Sequence record: ON529860.1
Length of the DNA stretch: 64,000 nucleotides
Direction: 5' to 3' (one strand)
The position numbers and the translations under genes were made by a program. Shown here one piece after another: positions 1,119 to 8,045 of the stretch. Within the stretch, counting starts at the first letter, position 1. Each line of letters opens with the position of its first letter. Below the pieces are notes generated by a model. That model was not told the origin of the DNA, did not search any database, and saw only the letters and a program-made list of their open reading frames with translations.

Positions 1119-1415
1119 TCAGATTTCGCCGAGCGCGCTCAGGTACAGGTCCAGGATGGCGTCTTCTTCCTGGCGCTTGGCCTTGTCCTGCTTGCGCAGG
1201 CGCAGCACCTTACGCAGAATCTTCACGTCGTAGCCTTCGCCCTTGGCTTCGGCGAAGACTTCCTTCATGTCGACCATGACGGCCTGCTTGTCCTCTTCGA
1301 GGCGCTCCAGCCGCTCGATGATCGAGCGCAGGCGGCCCTGGGCGGAGGCGGTCAGGGCGTCGTCGGCCGACATGGCGTTGGCGGGCTCGACGCCGGTGAT
1401 GGTGGTCTCGGTCAT
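1119..1415 (-). CDS. gapR: GapR/DUF2312 (UPF0335) nucleoid-associated protein
   Basis: SAQGRLRSIIERLERLEEDK...KGEGYDVKILRK...KRQEEDAILDLYLSALGEI closely matches Caulobacter GapR. Confidence 0.92.
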   Translation of the reverse strand: MTETTITGVEPANAMSADDALTASAQGRLRSIIERLERLEEDKQAVMVDMKEVFAEAKGEGYDVKILRKVLRLRKQDKAKRQEEDAILDLYLSALGEI

Positions 1416-2123: not shown

Positions 2124-3011
2124 TTACAAAGTCACGATCAGGCGGGGATTGAAGTTCGGGTTCAGTTCATGCCCGACATAGCCGCGAGGATTGCAGATCA
2201 CGCGGGTCTCGCCGATCTGGTAGTCGCTGCTGTCATGCATGTGACCATGCGCCCACAAGGCGGGCTCCCACTCCAAAATCAGCGGCTCCAGCCGCGACGC
2301 ATAGGCGGGGTTCAGCGGCGATCCCCGATAACGAGGATGGCTCGACTGCTCCGACGGCGCATGGTGGGAGATCACCACGGTCGGGCCGTCATGAGGAACC
2401 CGTAGCGTTTCCGTCAGGAAGAAGCGGCTTTCCAGATGAAGGCGCCGCGTGTCGTCCGCCGTCAGGCGCTGCTGCTGCTTCAGTTCGATCTGCCGATAGT
2501 CGTTCATGTCCGACTGGGCGTGCCGGATCGACAAGGGCCAGGTCCCATAGAGGTCGAAATCGGTCCACAGGGTGGCGCCGAGGAAACGCACGTCGCCAAC
2601 ATGGACCTGCTCGTTATCCATGACGAAGACGCGGGCGGGCGCCAGTTCGTCAGCCTTGGCCTTCATCTTCTCGATGTGGCGGTGGTAGCGCCGCTTGCCG
2701 TAGAACTCGTGATTGCCCGGAACATAGAGGCAGGGGACGTCAGGGAAATGTCGCGCCAGCCAGATCACGCCGACGACGCCCGTCGCCAGGTCGCCGGCGG
2801 CGATGACCACGTCGATCTCGTCAGCCGAGGGCGCCGTCCAGGTGCGACGGTCCATGCCGCCGAACTCCAGATGGAGGTCCGACAGGATCAGGGCGCGCAA
2901 CGGCCGCCGTCCGGGCGTCCGCCGCGCCAGGCCGGCTTCGATGTCAGCCTGCATGTCGGCCGCAGCCGCCACAGTGAACTCCATCTCAGCCTTGCTCCAC
3001 TTGGTCTCCAT
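2124..3011 (-). CDS. calcineurin-like metallophosphoesterase
   Basis: SDLHLE, AGD, GNHE, SHH and HGHMH motifs. Confidence 0.92.
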   Translation of the reverse strand: METKWSKAEMEFTVAAAADMQADIEAGLARRTPGRRPLRALILSDLHLEFGGMDRRTWTAPSADEIDVVIAAGDLATGVVGVIWLARHFPDVPCLYVPGNHEFYGKRRYHRHIEKMKAKADELAPARVFVMDNEQVHVGDVRFLGATLWTDFDLYGTWPLSIRHAQSDMNDYRQIELKQQQRLTADDTRRLHLESRFFLTETLRVPHDGPTVVISHHAPSEQSSHPRYRGSPLNPAYASRLEPLILEWEPALWAHGHMHDSSDYQIGETRVICNPRGYVGHELNPNFNPRLIVTL

Positions 3012-3031
3012 CGTGGAGCATCCTTGAAATC

Positions 3032-3150
3032 TGGAGCGGGTGGACAGACTCGAACTGCCGCCTCCGGGTTAGCCACCCGGCGCTCCTGGGTCCACGCGAA
3101 CCCCCGACGATGATTCGCGTGATCATCGTCGGCCCTAGAGCCTCACCCGC
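3032..3150 (-). ncRNA. 119-nt tRNA-like RNA with a two-hairpin insertion in the D-loop
   Basis: GCGGGTG/CACCCGC acceptor stem, T73-CCA, GCTC/GAGC D-stem, CCGGG/CCCGG stem with TGGCTAA loop, GGCAG-TTCGAGT-CTGTC T-arm. Confidence 0.75.
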
Positions 3151-3353
3151 ATAAGTTGGCAGGAGTTTTCAGATATGGCGAACCATACCCAGGGCGACCC
3201 TCCTGCCAGGAACCCCCGTCTCGGTTTCTTTCACTGGCCCCGACACGAGCACCTGTCAAAGCCTATCTAGCCGCCAGGCTTGCGGAACGTCACGGGCGAT
3301 TAGGCGCCTCGGGATGAACAGCGTCGCGGACGGCGTAGCATCGGCTTGCCGTG

Positions 3354-3383
3354 ATTACTGGCAGACGGCGCCGGTGGTGTCAA
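3354..3383 (-). promoter_or_regulatory. sigma70-like promoter
   Basis: TTGACA-N17/18-(C)AGTAAT directly downstream of a terminator. Confidence 0.55.
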
Positions 3384-3388
3384 CAATG

Positions 3389-3420
3389 AAAAACGCCCCG
3401 ACCTTTCGATCGGGGCGTTC
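3389..3420 (-). terminator. intrinsic terminator
   Basis: AACGCCCCGA/TCGGGGCGTT stem followed by a U-tract on the minus strand. Confidence 0.85.
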
Positions 3421-3421
3421 T

Positions 3422-3733
3422 TCAGAGGTTCGCCATCCACTGCTTGCGGCAGCGCGTGTGATCCTTCCAGGACTTGCCGCCGGGGCGCGACGCCATGAGG
3501 TCGTCGTAGGACGACGGAAGGACCATGCGTCGGCCACGGGCGCGGTAGAGGCGATCGTGGGCTTCGCCGATGTTGCGCCGCCGCTCCTGCATGGTGCGGG
3601 GGCAGCGGTGCATGTAGCGCCAGCGGTGGCGGAAGCGACGGCAGCGGTAGGGCTCGCCGGGCTCCAGGTAGAGGACGCGCCAGCCCACGAAGTAGAAGCC
3701 GGAGTGGGTGACGCGTTCGAATTGGGGCTTCAT
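3422..3733 (-). CDS. small Arg-rich basic protein
   Basis: GGAGG SD; RCPRTMQERR...LPSSYDD...SWKDH..KQW pattern; followed by a terminator. Confidence 0.75.
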   Translation of the reverse strand: MKPQFERVTHSGFYFVGWRVLYLEPGEPYRCRRFRHRWRYMHRCPRTMQERRRNIGEAHDRLYRARGRRMVLPSSYDDLMASRPGGKSWKDHTRCRKQWMANL

Positions 3734-3833
3734 GTCAGCCTCCTGCTAGGTTGAGTACCTAGCGGGTGCTGTATTCCAGGTAGAATTTGATCATGAGGTC
3801 ATCCTAGCCCAAGCGGGGCTGTTCGTCTAGGAA

Positions 3834-3922
3834 TGGCGGATGGGGCAGGGATCGAACCCGCGTAACCCTCTCGGGTGTCGACCGCTTAGCAAGCGGCTGC
3901 CTTACCTCTCGGCCACCCATCC
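3834..3922 (-). tRNA. tRNA-Ser(GCT)
   Basis: Cloverleaf, long variable arm, G73, encoded CCA. Confidence 0.95.
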
Positions 3923-4116: not shown

Positions 4117-4334
4117 TGGTGGAGGCGAGGGGATTCGAACCCCCGTAGACGCCGAACCCTCGCATTACCGAGGGCCGATCTCAGGTTTAGAACGCGTGTG
4201 CCGCCCTGACCATCTTCCGCAGGCCAGGGGGTCTATCGTAACGACCCCGTCGATCGGTTGCCTCTGCGTCCCGGATTTACCCGGACCGTTGTTCTGTTCC
4301 ACGGTGCTCATGCCGAAACCCGAGCGACGCCCCC
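4117..4334 (-). ncRNA. compact one-piece tmRNA-like RNA (218 nt)
   Basis: 5' GGGGGCG pairs with 3' CGCCTCC-A-CCA giving G3.U70 and A73; GGTTTCG D-loop analogue; GGGGG-TTCGAAT-CCCCT T-arm; ~140-nt multi-hairpin interior in place of an anticodon arm. Confidence 0.7.
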
Positions 4335-5130: not shown

Positions 5131-5212
5131 TGGAGAACCCTGGTGGAGTCGAACCACTTGCGCCTGGATTAAAAGCCCAATCCCGGCCACCCGGATTTAA
5201 CGCTCAAGGTCC
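5131..5212 (-). tRNA. atypical tRNA-Lys(TTT)
   Basis: CT-TTT-AA loop and T-arm present; ~10-nt linker before the D-hairpin; U73. Confidence 0.65.
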
Positions 5213-5225
5213 CCTAAAGTTATGT

Positions 5226-5316
5226 TGGTGAACGTGGTCGGACTCGCACCGACGATGAAGGTTGTAACCTAACGGGATTAAGAGCCCCGGCCTCTCGCTA
5301 CTGAGGTGACACGTCC
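5226..5316 (-). tRNA. atypical tRNA-Lys(CTT) with long variable arm
   Basis: CGGGG-CTCTTAA-TCCCG arm; AGGTT/AACCT variable hairpin; TGCGAGT T-loop. Confidence 0.75.
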
Positions 5317-5352: not shown

Positions 5353-5423
5353 TGGAGCCGGCGGACGGTGTCGAACCGTCCCATGTCCACTACGAAAGGT
5401 CAGCCCTGCCACCAGGCGCCGGC
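5353..5423 (-). tRNA. degenerate tRNA, isotype uncertain (Arg-TCG or Glu-TTC)
   Basis: Perfect acceptor stem and T-arm with CCA, but the anticodon stem barely pairs. Confidence 0.5.
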
Positions 5424-5429
5424 GTTGTT

Positions 5430-5500
5430 TGGTGCCAAGGGAGGGAGTCAAACCCTCGCTGAACCCATACCAAGGGCTCGACCGATCACCCGGCCTTGGC
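5430..5500 (-). tRNA. tRNA-Thr(GGT), short D-arm
   Basis: AGCCC-TTGGTAT-GGGTT arm, 71 nt. Confidence 0.85.
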
Positions 5501-5508
5501 GTTGATGT

Positions 5509-5583
5509 TGGTCGGAACACCAGGACTCGAACCTGGGACCCCTAGCTTCCCGAGCCAGTGCGCTACCGCTGCGCTACATTCCG
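5509..5583 (-). tRNA. tRNA-Pro(GGG)
   Basis: C1-G72, loop TC-GGG-AA (non-canonical C33). Confidence 0.85.
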
Positions 5584-7963: not shown

Positions 7964-8045
7964 TGGCACGGGTGGAGGGATTCGAACCCCCGACGTATGC
8001 TGGTTTTGGAGACCAGTGCCTTGAGCCAGACTTGGCGACACCCGT
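7964..8045 (-). tRNA. tRNA-Trp(CCA)
   Basis: CTGGT-CTCCAAA-ACCAG arm, G73. Confidence 0.92.

What the first reader, a model, noticed from the sequence alone, without database searches (positions are those of the whole stretch)
3032..3150. tRNA mimic with a kissing-loop domain inserted into the D-loop
Seen: a full cloverleaf frame (7-bp acceptor, GCTC/GAGC D-stem, 5-bp anticodon stem, TTCGA T-loop, CCA). The D-loop holds about 52 nt forming an 11-bp perfect hairpin (CCGACGATGAT-CACGCGA-ATCATCGTCGG) and a 6-bp hairpin (GGGTTC-GCGT-GGACCC). Their apical sequences ACGCGAA and TTCGCGT are complementary, suggesting a loop-loop pseudoknot. A8, G33 (loop TGGCTAA), U73 and a short variable region are incompatible with a normal tRNA-Ser(GCT). 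A canonical tRNA-Ser(GCT) is already present at 3834. Inference: not a decoding tRNA but a decoy or adaptor, for example bait for anticodon nucleases, T-box-like or Ro/Y-type tRNA mimicry, or a tRNA with a D-loop intron.
Basis: partly seen in the sequence, partly recalled or inferred. Interest (0 to 1): 0.74.

Follow-up and report, generated by a model that had tools for sequence, protein, structure and literature searches.

The report
Phage tRNA mimic with expanded D-loop
An unannotated, tRNA-shaped RNA gene in a jumbo Brevundimonas phage carries a conserved two-hairpin module inside its D-loop; it is real and under selection in nine related phages, it is probably not an ordinary decoding tRNA, and its function has not been tested.

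Summary
On the minus strand, 3150 to 3032, lies a 119-nt tRNA-shaped gene: 7-bp acceptor, GCUC/GAGC D-stem, 5-bp anticodon stem, UUCGAGU T-loop, U73-CCA. Its D-loop holds 52 nt: UAGGG, an 11-bp hairpin, a 6-bp hairpin, AG. ARAGORN and Rfam miss it. With the 45-nt insert removed, ARAGORN calls a 74-nt tRNA.

The window is Brevundimonas phage Papperlapapp. The gene is unannotated. It recurs at the same place, at the head of a metallophosphatase-deformylase operon inside the tRNA island, in nine Dolichocephalovirinae genomes (four distinct sequences).

The frame has 21 pairs, no mismatch and four compensatory double changes. The insert has diverged (44% identity) yet keeps two hairpins, and their apices stay complementary with a different sequence in each lineage. 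Position 33 is G/C/C/A, never U. The anticodon is GCU or GUU with the other anticodon-arm and acceptor-end identity positions unchanged. The acceptor end is glycine-type and the anticodon stem initiator-type.

This is a selected RNA, probably matured like a tRNA but unlikely to be a normal decoder. I favour a trans-acting tRNA mimic; this is untested. There is no intron signature, and metagenome and genome scans found no relatives. It is a new variant of a known kind, of moderately high interest.

The parts
3353..3383 (-). Promoter-like motif TTGACA-N17-CAGTAATC, just downstream of the terminator hairpin of the preceding gene
   Evidence: GTTGAC...TGCCAGTAATC is conserved in Papperlapapp, Marchewka, Gurke, CcrColossus and CcrPW, 200-230 nt upstream of the element. 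It occurs once in the window. The E. coli-type consensus scan does not flag it, so its promoter function is inferred.
3151..3352 (-). About 200-nt structured leader between the promoter-like motif and the tRNA-like 5' end. It ends in the conserved CUUAU immediately before G+1.
   Evidence: Alignment A1 shows conserved blocks: GACGGGG(U)U, UCUGAAAAC, CUUAU. No Rfam family matches.
3157..3209 (-). Leader helix P1 (CUGGCAGGAG 3209-3200 pairs with CUCCUGCCA 3165-3157). It encloses a hairpin that overlaps a 5-codon mini-ORF, AUG GUU CGC CAU AUC UGA (3186-3169).
   Evidence: P1 co-varies: GGCAGGAG/CUCCUGCC in Brevundimonas phages, UGGUGG/CCACCA in CcrColossus and CcrPW. The start-to-stop distance of the mini-ORF is 15 nt in all three lineages, although the hairpins differ. 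Its function is unknown.
3032..3150 (-). The tRNA-like RNA gene: 119 nt, with encoded U73-CCA
   Evidence: Covariance model R1 finds exactly one copy in the window (125.9 bits). It is unannotated in ON529860.1.
3086..3137 (-). Expanded D-loop (52 nt): UAGGG + H1 + H2 + AG. With the D-stem it forms a three-way junction.
   Evidence: UAGGG is invariant in all four distinct sequences.
3104..3132 (-). Hairpin H1: 11 bp, loop CACGCGA. The apex 8-mer CACGCGAA lies at 3121-3114.
   Evidence: H1 is 29 nt in Kikimora and Gurke as well, with a different sequence. Between CcrColossus and CcrPW, all five H1 substitutions keep pairing, and two pairs change on both sides (read).
3088..3103 (-). Hairpin H2: 6 bp with one U.G, loop GCGU. 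The apex 8-mer UUCGCGUG lies at 3100-3093 and is complementary to the H1 apex.
   Evidence: The duplex energy of the two apices is -11.3 kcal/mol.
3064..3080 (-). Anticodon arm CCGGG-UGGCUAA-CCCGG. It has three G-C pairs next to the loop, G33 and anticodon GCU.
   Evidence: The stem and positions 32, 34 and 36-38 are invariant in the family. Position 33 is G/C/C/A and position 35 is C/C/U/U. Only 1 of 39 neighbouring phage tRNAs has the three G-C pairs.
3043..3059 (-). T-arm GGCAG-UUCGAGU-CUGUC
   Evidence: The T-loop is canonical. Two T-stem pairs change on both sides across lineages.
2124..3011 (-). First gene of the downstream operon: calcineurin-like metallophosphoesterase. The annotated start lies 20 nt after the CCA. 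This is context, not part of the RNA.
   Evidence: Pfam PF00149 and phrog_1649. The same gene follows the element in all homologous loci. DUF4170, GapR-like and peptide deformylase genes follow it.

Best explanation
The element is a genuine RNA gene derived from a tRNA and kept by selection.

How it is probably made (inferred):
- It is transcribed from its own promoter-like site, through a 200-nt structured leader, at the head of the phosphatase-deformylase operon inside the phage tRNA island.
- It is most likely matured like the neighbouring tRNAs. RNase P would cut after the conserved CUUAU leader. The 3' end would be the encoded U73-CCA.
- The product would be a stable RNA of about 119 nt.

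What the sequence shows:
- Acceptor, anticodon and T arms are canonical, and the invariant UAGGG can still supply G18-G19 to the T-loop.
- The rest of the D-loop is replaced by a three-way junction with two hairpins. Their apical sequences co-evolve to stay complementary.
- I infer that the apices pair, as a kissing complex or an alternative duplex, and build an extra domain at the tRNA elbow.

Why it is probably not a standard decoder (inferred):
- The anticodon switches between GCU and GUU without any change in the other anticodon-arm and acceptor-end identity positions.
- Position 33 is never U.
- The body fits neither serine nor asparagine identity.
- Canonical tRNA-Ser(GCU) and tRNA-Asn genes exist in the same genome.

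Most likely mechanism (inferred, untested): a trans-acting tRNA mimic. Its invariant initiator-type anticodon stem-loop and glycine-type acceptor end would engage a tRNA-binding factor. That factor could be a host tRNA-targeting toxin or nuclease, or a processing or charging enzyme. The elbow domain would keep the RNA off the ribosome or make it a poor substrate.

My confidence that it is a selected, structured tRNA-derived RNA is about 0.9. My confidence in the non-decoding mimic mechanism is about 0.45.
For: Frame:
- 21 base pairs, 0 mismatches in four distinct sequences.
- Pairs 1-72, 5-68, 51-63 and 52-62 change on both sides.
- Insert-deleted versions are called 74-nt tRNAs by ARAGORN.
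- The frame-enforced fold is within 0.3-1.0 kcal/mol of the free MFE in all four.

Insert:
- It is 45 nt (29 + 16) in both Brevundimonas clades at only 44% ungapped identity, against 85-96% for the frame.
- It is 51-52 nt in CcrColossus and CcrPW, again as two hairpins.
- Apex-apex complementarity is 8, 8, 6 and 8 nt with different sequences: CACGCGAA/UUCGCGUG; UCGGCCGA twice; AGCGCU twice; GAAGCGCU/AGCGCUUC.
- A structure-preserving permutation gives P = 0.006, 0.011, 0.14 and 0.011, and the match is always at both apices.

Conservation and context:
- The element sits at the same position in nine phage genomes.
- UCCA is invariant while the 3' flank diverges. All 15 canonical tRNAs of the window also encode CCA.

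Against a decoding role:
- The loop is U-N-G-Y-U-A-A with position 33 = G/C/C/A.
- There is no long variable arm.
- The acceptor starts GCG or ACG, whereas the phage's tRNA-Ser start GGA.
- The discriminator is U73, whereas serine and asparagine identity use G73 (Table 1 of PMC9976931).
- Canonical tRNA-Ser(GCU) and tRNA-Asn are present.

For a mimic:
- The acceptor end carries the bacterial glycine set U73, G1-C72, C2-G71, G3-C70. U73 + G71 is also the identity of the TacT toxin.
- The anticodon stem has the three G-C pairs typical of initiator tRNA. The exact stem and positions 32 and 36-38 recur in phage tRNA-Met(CAU) genes, several of which look initiator-type by my own reading of their D-arm and 1-72 position.
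- A non-U33 version of this stem-loop was found as a tRNA only in viral contigs. None of 45 hits in 185,579 genomes is a tRNA.
- Alphaproteobacterial VapC toxins cut tRNA anticodon loops (PMC10945364, PMC8522696). Phage tRNAs are known to carry anticodon-loop changes against such nucleases (PMC10264068).
Against: - There are no expression, end-mapping or charging data.
- Only four distinct sequences from three lineages exist, so covariation counts are small. CcrColossus and CcrPW are not independent.
- Thermodynamic z-scores are modest: -3.1, -2.0, -1.2, -1.5.
- In Kikimora the free MFE pairs the two apices as a nested duplex and disturbs the D-stem and anticodon stem. In the Colossus clade CUAGG(G) can pair with CCU(U)AG instead of forming the D-stem. 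The D-stem itself shows only a one-sided change.
- Most apices are GC-only palindromes on perfect hairpins. That could arise from template-switch mutation rather than from selection for kissing. A kiss between an 11-bp and a 6-bp hairpin with no linker may be strained.
- A bait should copy its target exactly, yet positions 33 and 35 vary.
- C33 and extra arms also occur in otherwise canonical tRNAs of these phages. These oddities therefore do not by themselves exclude decoding.
- The constant position directly upstream of one operon also fits a cis role.
Confidence: 0.45

Rival explanations
1. It is a decorated but functional decoding tRNA. On this view it is a spare phage tRNA whose non-U33 loop and extra elbow domain protect it from host tRNA-targeting nucleases, or mark it for phage factors. 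It would still be charged and used on the ribosome.
For: - T-loop, acceptor, CCA and U36-A37-A38 are canonical.
- Other, otherwise canonical tRNAs of these phages carry C33: Pro-GGG at 5509-5583, and CcrColossus Pro-CGG, Pro-GGG and Ile-GAU.
- Class-I isotypes there carry long extra arms: tRNA-Asn 89 nt, Lys 90 nt, Trp 82-86 nt.
- Phage tRNAs with anticodon-loop changes that evade nucleases are documented (PMC10264068, PMC11464382).
- In CcrColossus and CcrPW, G34-U35-U36 matches the anticodon part of asparagine identity.
Against: - The anticodon changes GCU to GUU without any change at the acceptor-end or other anticodon-arm identity positions, so at least one clade would be uncharged or mischarged.
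- There is no long variable arm and no GGA acceptor start for SerRS.
- The discriminator is U73 instead of G73.
- The A8/U14 swap is unusual.
- A 45-nt domain emerges next to G18-G19, where (from general knowledge of tRNA structure, not tested here) RNase P, the L1 stalk and other elbow readers dock.
- Canonical tRNAs with the same anticodons are already encoded.
Confidence: 0.2
2. It is a cis-acting element of the downstream mRNA. A tRNA-like structure in the 5' UTR would recruit RNase P, RNase E or a tRNA-binding protein. That would set the mRNA 5' end, its stability or the translation of the phosphatase-deformylase operon. The leader mini-ORF could be part of the same switch.
For: - The element always lies directly upstream of the same operon, under one promoter-like motif.
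- The CCA is 17-20 nt from the annotated start codon in Brevundimonas phages.
- The conserved leader has an SD/anti-SD-like helix and a 5-codon ORF.
- From memory: the tRNA-tufB type of co-transcription, and the thrS operator that mimics a tRNA arm.
Against: - In CcrColossus and CcrPW the start codon is about 130 nt downstream.
- In Papperlapapp the homology-supported start may also be about 110 nt further on.
- A UTR operator needs neither an invariant U73-CCA, nor a full T-loop, nor a co-varying two-hairpin elbow domain.
- The anticodon arm is more conserved than anything near the ribosome-binding site.
Confidence: 0.15
3. It is a tRNA gene interrupted by a D-loop intron that is removed to give a 74-nt tRNA.
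For: Removing the 45-nt insert restores a standard-size tRNA that ARAGORN accepts. D-arm introns exist in archaeal tRNA genes (bioRxiv 10.64898/2026.10.13.758758, seen).
Against: - There is no bulge-helix-bulge. The sequences flanking the two junctions (CCGA... and ...ACCC) cannot form the central 4-bp helix.
- No ribozyme or group I hit appears at E up to 10, and 45-52 nt is far too short for group I.
- From memory: protein-dependent tRNA splicing is not known in bacteria.
- Even the spliced product would keep non-U33, A8/U14 and the identity conflicts.
- Selection acts on the insert's structure and on apex complementarity. That is not expected of a spacer that is discarded.
Confidence: 0.04
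4. It is a decaying tRNA pseudogene that picked up a GC-rich palindromic insertion and has no function.
For: - The island contains several degenerate or uncalled tRNA-like sequences.
- CcrColossus is annotated with tRNA pseudogenes.
- Perfect palindromes can arise by template switching.
Against: - There are zero mismatches in 21 frame pairs across lineages whose inserts have diverged to 44% identity.
- Compensatory changes occur in the acceptor stem, T-stem and H1.
- The insert architecture and length are retained, and the apices co-vary.
- The insert is not a repeated element in the window.
Confidence: 0.05
5. It acts at the DNA level: the inverted repeats would be protein-binding or cruciform sites, such as an operator or an origin, that merely lie inside an old tRNA gene.
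For: The two apical motifs are copies of one site in inverted orientation, 22-26 bp apart centre to centre (my reading). Most are palindromes.
Against: - This does not explain conservation of the whole cloverleaf with RNA-type G.U pairs (G10.U25, G50.U64, U.G in H2), or of the CCA.
- The motif sequence differs completely between lineages, whereas a binding protein would be expected to hold it constant.
Confidence: 0.03

Closest known systems
Phage-encoded tRNAs with anticodon-loop changes that escape host tRNA nucleases (T5 and mycobacteriophage examples; PMC10264068, PMC11464382, PMC11555353)
   Same: It is encoded in a phage tRNA island. The anticodon loop departs from the norm at position 33. 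Non-U33 versions of this stem-loop were found as tRNAs only in viral contigs.
   Different: Those tRNAs keep a normal body and a defined amino-acid identity, and they act as replacements in decoding. This RNA has a 45-52-nt D-loop domain, conflicting identity elements, and an anticodon that differs between clades.
[quoted passage not shown]
   Same: It is a non-tRNA stable-RNA candidate embedded in a phage tRNA cluster, with no known function.
   Different: I tested no sequence or structure relationship. From memory, the T4 RNAs are not described as full cloverleaves with a D-loop domain.
Class II tRNAs and allo-tRNAs (an extra helical arm in the variable region; PMC7609411)
   Same: An extra helix is added to a tRNA core. 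The same phages give class-I isotypes long variable arms.
   Different: Here the expansion is in the D-loop, consists of two hairpins in a three-way junction, and is far larger. The variable region is only 4 nt.
Archaeal tRNA genes with non-canonical introns in the D-arm
   Same: An intervening sequence lies at a D-loop position, and its removal restores a standard tRNA.
   Different: There is no bulge-helix-bulge motif and the host is bacterial. The structure of the insert itself is under selection.
Bacterial Y RNA YrlA (a tRNA-like module tethered to Ro60; PMC4201824)
   Same: It is a non-decoding RNA that mimics a tRNA, and examples also occur in phages.
   Different: In YrlA the tRNA-like part is internal and continues into a Ro-binding stem. 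Here there is a free acceptor end with CCA and a full anticodon arm, no Rfam hit, and no Ro gene in the operon.
Loop-loop (kissing) modules: purine riboswitch L2-L3, hammerhead stem I/II loops, ColE1 RNA I/RNA II, HIV-1 DIS (from memory)
   Same: Two hairpins with complementary apical loops; in the riboswitch and the hammerhead they belong to one three-way junction. There is a fully complementary 7-8-nt loop pair as in ColE1, and palindromic loops as in the DIS.
   Different: This is a structural analogy only. None of these modules is built into a tRNA D-loop. The stems here are unequal (11 and 6 bp), and most loops are tetraloops that would have to open.

Membership tests
Canonical tRNA (Rfam RF00005 / ARAGORN) | Four-stem cloverleaf with 7/4/5/5 bp and a 7-nt T-loop UUCRANY | tested here: met
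   21 pairs, no mismatch in four sequences, four pairs with double changes. T-loop is UUCGAGU or UUCAAGU.
Canonical tRNA (Rfam RF00005 / ARAGORN) | D-loop of about 7-11 nt, and detection by standard tRNA finders | tested here: not met
   The D-loop is 52 nt (58-59 nt in the Colossus clade). ARAGORN finds nothing. Rfam gives no hit in Papperlapapp even at E = 10. Gurke scores 31.1 bits only in an alternative register that uses an internal GCGGGUC.
Canonical tRNA (Rfam RF00005 / ARAGORN) | Near-universal U33, U8 and A14 | tested here: not met
   Position 33 is G, C, C, A. Position 8 is A and the first D-loop base is U in all four sequences. Most of the canonical tRNAs nearby have U33, except four with C33; most have U8.
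Canonical tRNA (Rfam RF00005 / ARAGORN) | Mature 5' end made by RNase P, 3' CCA, aminoacylation | not testable with these tools
   CCA and U73 are encoded and invariant, and CUUAU precedes +1. There are no RNA data.
Bacterial tRNA-Ser(GCU) | Long variable arm, G73, G2-C71 (Table 1 of PMC9976931) | tested here: not met
   The variable region is 4 nt, the discriminator is U73, and pair 2-71 is C2-G71. The phage's real tRNA-Ser genes are 88-92 nt and start GGA.
Bacterial tRNA-Asn(GUU) | G34 U35 U36 and G73 | tested here: not met
   The anticodon is met only in CcrColossus and CcrPW. The discriminator is U73 in all (identity set).
Bacterial tRNA-Gly | U73, G1-C72, C2-G71, G3-C70, C35, C36 | tested here: inconclusive
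   All four acceptor-end elements are met in the Brevundimonas clades, and three of four in the Colossus clade (A1-U72). C35 occurs only in the Brevundimonas clades. C36 is never present; it is U36.
Bacterial initiator tRNA | Three G-C pairs 29-41, 30-40, 31-39 | tested here: met
   The stem CCGGG/CCCGG is invariant. Only 1 of 39 neighbouring phage tRNAs has this feature.
Bacterial initiator tRNA | 1-72 mismatch, A11-U24, anticodon CAU | tested here: not met
   Pair 1-72 is G1-C72 or A1-U72, pair 11-24 is C11-G24, and the anticodon is GCU or GUU. The defining features are from memory.
Intron-containing tRNA (archaeal type) | Bulge-helix-bulge motif at the two junctions | tested here: not met
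   Read: the junction flanks cannot form the 4-bp central helix with 3-nt bulges.
Intron-containing tRNA (bacterial group I type) | Group I ribozyme core, over 200 nt, usually in the anticodon loop | tested here: not met
   The insert is 45-52 nt and lies in the D-loop. There is no Rfam intron or ribozyme hit.
tmRNA (one-piece or permuted) | tRNA-like domain without an anticodon arm, plus a tag reading frame | tested here: not met
   ARAGORN reports no tmRNA. A full anticodon arm is present. The 5-codon leader ORF has its own start codon and lies 5' of the tRNA-like part.
Y RNA / YrlA | Match to the family model, and a Ro60 (Rsr) partner | tested here: not met
   There is no Rfam hit. The operon proteins are a metallophosphatase, DUF4170, a GapR-like protein and a deformylase. 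The rest of the 357-kb genome was not searched.
T-box riboswitch | Stem I specifier, T-box sequence and antiterminator | tested here: not met
   There is no Rfam hit in the element or the leader. The element is tRNA-shaped, not a tRNA binder.
Anti-defence phage tRNA or decoy | Resists or titrates a defined host tRNA-targeting effector | not testable with these tools
   Only circumstantial evidence exists: the non-U33 loop is phage-specific, and alphaproteobacterial VapC toxins cut anticodon loops.
Kissing-loop module | Complementary apical loops maintained by covariation | tested here: met
   Complementarity is 8, 8, 6 and 8 nt with different sequences, always apex to apex. P = 0.006-0.14 per sequence.
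Kissing-loop module | The loops actually pair while both stems persist (three-dimensional structure) | not testable with these tools
   Nested alternative duplexes compete in Kikimora and CcrPW. Chemical probing or a solved structure is needed.

The most novel reading that the evidence does not exclude
This may be the first described member of a phage-specific class of tRNA-derived RNAs, in which the tRNA core is kept but a large structured domain is grafted into it. Here the domain is a kissing-loop three-way junction in the D-loop.

Separate phage contigs show comparable grafts:
- L024 has an unrelated 51-nt D-loop hairpin.
- L031 has an insert in the T/variable region.
- Both carry C33.

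Such RNAs would not decode. They would act in the tRNA-centred phage-host conflict. They could serve as uncleavable decoys or sponges for tRNA-targeting toxins. Alternatively they could be non-proteinogenic aminoacyl carriers: the acceptor end is glycine-type and the elbow would be blocked from the ribosome.
Probability: 0.3. Interest if true: 0.8.

Novelty: new variant of a known kind. Interest (0 to 1): 0.62.

Why it matters
Phage tRNAs are now seen as players in defence and counter-defence. So far the known examples are normal tRNAs with point changes in the anticodon loop.

This element would add a different solution: a tRNA core carrying a selected extra domain at the elbow. Its anticodon arm and acceptor end belong to different identity classes. 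To my knowledge, and in the searched literature, no natural tRNA has a structured D-loop expansion of this size.

It also shows that standard tRNA finders miss such genes:
- The element is unannotated in all nine genomes.
- Several further tRNA-like sequences in the same island are also uncalled.
- An unrelated D-loop-expanded tRNA-like gene turned up by accident in a viral contig.

The phenomenon may therefore be wider than these phages.

The system is tractable. The phages and the host, Brevundimonas pondensis LVF1, are isolated. The loop-loop hypothesis can be tested directly with compensatory mutants.

Tried and rejected
Searches for more relatives:
- Exact-pattern scans for the 3' half found nothing in metagenome or genome contigs.
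- The D-arm pattern gave 10 metagenome hits, all chance.
- Viral contigs gave only CcrColossus and CcrPW.
- blastn with the Colossus element at E up to 0.1 added no phage.
- The family therefore stays at four distinct sequences, and no large covariation test was possible.

The genome scan for the non-U33 stem-loop gave 45 hits, none a tRNA.

Covariance model R1 behaves mainly as a general tRNA detector. L024 (56.9 bits) and L031 (47.6 bits) score barely above ordinary tRNAs (35-47 bits). Specific homology with them is not shown.

Paralogue search: no phage tRNA is a close relative of the insert-deleted body. The best matches are tRNA-Gly for the Brevundimonas clades and tRNA-Trp for CcrColossus, at 66-81% identity.

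Readings rejected:
- tmRNA, Y RNA, T-box, riboswitch and ribozyme: no Rfam or ARAGORN support.
- Insert as a mobile repeat: rejected.
- A longer conserved leader peptide: the reading frame of the conserved nucleotides differs between lineages.

Downstream phosphatase:
- Only generic Pfam and PHROG matches; no PDB or NCBIfam hit.
- Its Cr30 homologue sits one gene from an RNA ligase.
- No RNA ligase is in this window, so an RNA-repair link stays speculative.

The consensus promoter/terminator scan found nothing in 2800-3900.

Literature searches found no description of this element, nor of D-loop-expanded phage tRNAs.
Full report
IDENTITY OF THE WINDOW AND THE OBSERVATION

The window is the start of the Brevundimonas phage vB_BpoS-Papperlapapp genome (ON529860.1). 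This is a 357-kb jumbo siphovirus of the Dolichocephalovirinae; the match is 100%.

The feature lies on the minus strand, 3150 to 3032.
- a 7-bp acceptor stem, A8 G9, and a GCUC/GAGC D-stem;
- a 5-bp anticodon stem with loop UGGCUAA, and a 4-nt variable region;
- a 5-bp T-stem with loop UUCGAGU, then U73 and CCA;
- a 52-nt D-loop made of UAGGG, a perfect 11-bp hairpin (H1, loop CACGCGA), a 6-bp hairpin (H2, loop GCGU, one U.G pair) and AG.

The complementary apical stretches are 8 nt long (CACGCGAA and UUCGCGUG). Each occurs only once in the 64-kb window.

The unconstrained minimum-energy fold is exactly cloverleaf plus H1 plus H2 (-62.3 kcal/mol, z = -3.1). ARAGORN, Rfam at gathering threshold, and Rfam at E up to 10 all fail to call it. 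The GenBank record has no feature there. When the 45-nt insert is deleted in silico, ARAGORN calls a normal 74-nt tRNA with anticodon GCU.

HOMOLOGUES AND SELECTION

The element occurs in nine phage genomes:
- five Papperlapapp-type Brevundimonas phages, with an identical 119-nt core;
- Kikimora and Gurke, identical to each other;
- Caulobacter phages CcrColossus and CcrPW.

This gives four distinct sequences in three lineages.

Across them the 21 frame base pairs show no mismatch. Four pairs change on both sides (1-72 G-C/A-U, 5-68 G-C/A-U, 51-63, 52-62) and two change on one side through G.U.

The frame is 85-96% identical, whereas the insert is 44% identical between the two Brevundimonas clades. 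Yet the insert is 45 nt in both clades and divides identically:
- H1 is 29 nt with 11 pairs. In Kikimora these are 6 + 5 pairs around a small internal loop.
- H2 is 16 nt with 6 pairs and a 4-nt loop.

CcrColossus and CcrPW have a 51-52-nt insert, again with two hairpins (9 and 8 pairs). Between these two phages, the five substitutions in H1 all preserve pairing, and two pairs change on both sides (read).

In every lineage the two apices are complementary, with a different sequence each time:
- CACGCGAA/UUCGCGUG;
- UCGGCCGA in both hairpins;
- AGCGCU in both hairpins;
- GAAGCGCU/AGCGCUUC.

I ran a permutation that keeps each hairpin's structure and composition. It gives P = 0.006, 0.011, 0.14 and 0.011 for a run that long anywhere between the hairpins. 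In reality the match is always apex to apex. The predicted duplex energies are -8 to -14.5 kcal/mol.

The insert is not a repeated element of the genome.

LIMITS OF THE STRUCTURAL INFERENCE

- Only three lineages exist.
- Thermodynamic z-scores of the homologues are modest, -1.2 to -2.0.
- Apart from Papperlapapp, the apices are GC-only palindromes capping near-perfect hairpins. Such palindromes are self-complementary as well as mutually complementary.
- In Kikimora, and in CcrPW under frame constraint, the folding program pairs the two apices as a nested duplex instead of two hairpins. This costs or gains at most about 1 kcal/mol.
- In the Colossus clade CUAGG(G) can pair with CCU(U)AG in competition with the D-stem.
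- Sequence alone cannot distinguish an intramolecular kiss, an alternative conformer and intermolecular pairing.

The Papperlapapp pair is the clearest case for true loop-loop pairing. It is not palindromic beyond CGCG, and it has a 7-nt loop that is fully complementary.

CONTEXT

In all lineages the element has the same neighbours. A conserved promoter-like motif (GTTGAC...TGCCAGTAATC; window 3383-3353) follows the terminator hairpin of the preceding gene. A leader of 200-230 nt comes next, then the element.

Downstream lies an operon encoding a calcineurin-like metallophosphoesterase, a DUF4170 protein, small ORFs, a GapR-like DNA-binding protein and a peptide deformylase.

The whole unit lies inside the phage's tRNA island. 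In Papperlapapp, fifteen called tRNAs lie upstream in the window and five more follow after the deformylase. In CcrColossus, arrays lie on both sides.

The five bases before +1 (CUUAU) and the UCCA at the 3' end are invariant, while the flanks diverge. All 15 canonical tRNAs in the window also encode CCA. From this I infer tRNA-type maturation. It is not shown.

WHAT KIND OF tRNA-LIKE MOLECULE

The anticodon arm is the most conserved part: the stem and positions 32, 34 and 36-38 are invariant. Position 33 is G, C, C, A, never U. Position 35 is C or U, so the anticodon is GCU in Brevundimonas phages and GUU in Caulobacter phages. The other anticodon-arm and acceptor-end identity positions do not change with it.

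I compared the sequence with the identity sets in Table 1 of PMC9976931:
- Serine: the long variable arm, G73 and G2-C71 are absent.
- Asparagine: G73 is absent.
- Glycine: the acceptor end is a complete bacterial set (U73, G1-C72, C2-G71, G3-C70) in the Brevundimonas clades, but C36 is missing.
- The combination U73 + G71 is also what the TacT toxin reads.

The anticodon stem has three consecutive G-C pairs next to the loop. From memory, this is the hallmark of initiator tRNA. Only 1 of 39 neighbouring phage tRNAs has it. The identical stem with U32 and U36-A37-A38 occurs in phage tRNA-Met(CAU) genes, several of which look initiator-type. The other initiator marks are absent.

Canonical tRNA-Ser(GCU) and tRNA-Asn genes are present in the same genomes.

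A molecule whose anticodon changes meaning while nothing else adapts is unlikely to be a standard decoder. The same holds for one whose arms belong to different identity classes. That is inference.

A CAUTION FROM THE NEIGHBOURS

These phages treat their tRNAs unusually in general:
- C33 occurs in otherwise canonical tRNA-Pro(GGG) (window 5509-5583), and in CcrColossus tRNA-Pro(CGG), Pro(GGG) and one of two tRNA-Ile(GAU).
- Class-I isotypes carry long variable arms: Asn 84-89 nt, Lys 90 nt, Trp 82-86 nt.
- Several further tRNA-like sequences are not called at all.

The element may therefore be the extreme of a lineage-wide tendency to decorate tRNAs.

The tendency appears to be phage-specific. 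I scanned for the stem-loop CCGGG-U-V-NN-UAA-CCCGG-AGG, where V at position 33 is any base except U. In 185,579 representative bacterial and archaeal genomes this gave 45 hits, about the chance expectation, and none is a tRNA. The much smaller viral collection held at least eleven non-U33 tRNA-like genes with that stem-loop.

One of them, L024 at 1009-1136, is an unrelated 128-nt tRNA-like gene. It has a 51-nt branched hairpin inserted in its D-loop, C33 and CCA. Another, L031, shares the acceptor, the D-arm and the exact loop UCGUUAA with CcrColossus, but carries its insert in the T/variable region. Covariance model R1 does not separate these two from ordinary tRNAs. They are parallels, not demonstrated homologues.

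MECHANISM

Shown:
- a conserved tRNA frame with compensatory changes;
- a conserved two-hairpin D-loop module with co-varying complementary apices;
- invariant CCA, anticodon arm and UAGGG;
- a fixed genomic position.

Inferred:
- transcription from the upstream motif;
- maturation by RNase P and at the CCA end;
- an L-shape with an extra domain at the elbow;
- no ordinary decoding.

My preferred reading (about 0.45) is a trans-acting tRNA mimic that engages a tRNA-binding factor through its anticodon arm and acceptor end. The elbow domain would exclude it from the ribosome or make it a poor nuclease substrate. The setting makes a role in the tRNA-centred arms race plausible. Alphaproteobacterial VapC toxins cut tRNA anticodon loops (PMC10945364, PMC8522696), and phage tRNAs are known counter-measures (PMC10264068, PMC11464382, PMC13056530). 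No specific target is indicated, and the variation at positions 33 and 35 argues against exact bait.

Rivals:
- a decorated but working tRNA (0.2);
- a cis-acting processing or regulatory element for the operon (0.15);
- a pseudogene (0.05);
- an intron (0.04);
- a DNA-level site (0.03).

COMPARISON WITH KNOWN THINGS, AND NOVELTY

- It is not a member of the canonical tRNA family as operationally defined. It fails on D-loop size, U33 and U8/A14, and the finders miss it.
- It is not a tmRNA, Y RNA, T-box, or intron-bearing tRNA.
- The nearest functional precedents are anticodon-loop-mutated phage tRNAs, and the unexplained T4 RNAs C and D from the T4 tRNA region (PMC3014915).
- The nearest structural precedents for the insert are loop-loop modules in three-way junctions (from memory).
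- The genome papers and the reviews of non-canonical tRNAs that I searched do not describe it. Gill et al. state that Rfam found no RNA other than tRNAs in these phages (PMC3556154).

I rate it a new variant of a known kind, with interest 0.62. It is a clear, selected and unusual structure in a tractable system. However, it is confined to nine related genomes and has no functional evidence.

Noticed in passing
window 3157-3209 (-); L002 about 2005-2060; L003 about 1865-1905: The leader holds a helix whose 5' strand looks like a Shine-Dalgarno sequence (GGCAGGAGG) and whose 3' strand is its complement. The helix co-varies to UGGUGG/CCACCA in Caulobacter phages. It encloses a hairpin that overlaps a 5-codon ORF: MVRHI or MARHI, VTHHL, MRTRI. 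The start-to-stop distance is 15 nt in all three lineages, although the hairpins differ. The stop lies 17-18 nt (35 nt in CcrColossus) before the tRNA-like 5' end. This could be a translational switch or a coincidence of the hairpin.
   Followed up: partly
window 5509-5583 (-); L050 11500-11577, 11661-11737, 18612-18687: Otherwise canonical phage tRNAs with C33 instead of U33: Pro-GGG here, and Pro-CGG, Pro-GGG and one of two Ile-GAU in CcrColossus.
   Followed up: partly
L050 19055-19143, 12020-12109, 9241-9326; window 7964-8045 (-); L097 6524-6607: Class-I isotypes carry long variable arms in these phages: tRNA-Asn 84-89 nt, tRNA-Lys(CUU) 90 nt, tRNA-Trp 82-86 nt.
   Followed up: no
window 5430-5500 (-), 5353-5423 (-), about 5226-5316 (-), about 5131-5213 (-), about 4117-4230 (-); L097 7009-7083 (-), 6325-6405 (-): Further tRNA-like sequences in the island that ARAGORN and the GenBank record do not call.
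- Two in the window and two in L097 are found by model R1 at 21-25 bits.
- One looks like tRNA-Lys(CUU) with a long variable arm and an odd T-loop, UGCGAGU.
- One looks like a degenerate tRNA-Lys(UUU).
- One has a good T-arm, acceptor strand and CCA, but an aberrant anticodon region containing UUCUAAA.
The last three were read by eye.
   Followed up: partly
L024 1009-1136 (+) (IMGVR_UViG_3300038682_000215): An unrelated 128-nt tRNA-like gene in a 41-kb viral contig. It has a normal-looking D-loop start (AAAUGGUCA) followed by a 51-nt branched hairpin inserted before the 3' D-stem strand. Its loop is UCUUUAA (C33) and it ends in CCA. The free fold recovers the cloverleaf. It is a second, independent case of a large D-loop insertion.
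   Followed up: partly
L009, L018, L023, L011 (viral contigs); L031 6107-6215 (-): - L009, L018, L023 and L011 carry tRNA-like genes with a long variable arm just upstream of a gene that looks RecT-like by eye. Near-identical copies differ in the anticodon (CAU or CUU) and at position 33 (A or U).
- L031 shares the acceptor, the D-arm and the loop UCGUUAA with the CcrColossus element, but has a roughly 30-nt hairpin in the T/variable region instead of the D-loop.
   Followed up: partly
L037 711-782 (+) (Gurke): The Rfam tRNA model scores 31.1 bits, above its threshold, in an alternative register. An internal GCGGGUC at the H1/H2 boundary replaces the true 5' acceptor strand. This is specific to the Kikimora/Gurke lineage and is probably a coincidence.
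   Followed up: yes
window 2124-3011 (-): The annotated metallophosphatase starts 20 nt after the CCA. Homologues in Kikimora, Gurke, CcrColossus, CcrPW and other phages align only from residue 38. The first 37 codons may be a lineage-specific extension or an over-extended start call.
   Followed up: no
L096 2474-4561 (Caulobacter phage Cr30): The Cr30 homologue of the phosphatase lies one small gene away from an RNA ligase gene. This hints at an RNA end-healing role for this phosphatase family. No RNA ligase is detectable in this 64-kb window.
   Followed up: partly
window 1119-1415 (-): A phage gene with a strong GapR-like DNA-binding domain lies in the same operon (PF10073, E = 5e-32). The family takes its name from the nucleoid-associated protein GapR.
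   Followed up: no
L007, L008, L012, L020, L021, L025, L028 (viral contigs): The same hairpin sequence, CCGGG-UGUUUAA or UGAAUAA-CCCGG, occurs with no tRNA around it. It directly abuts a Shine-Dalgarno sequence (AGGAAGGAG) and a start codon of a conserved gene. It looks like a separate regulatory hairpin.
   Followed up: no
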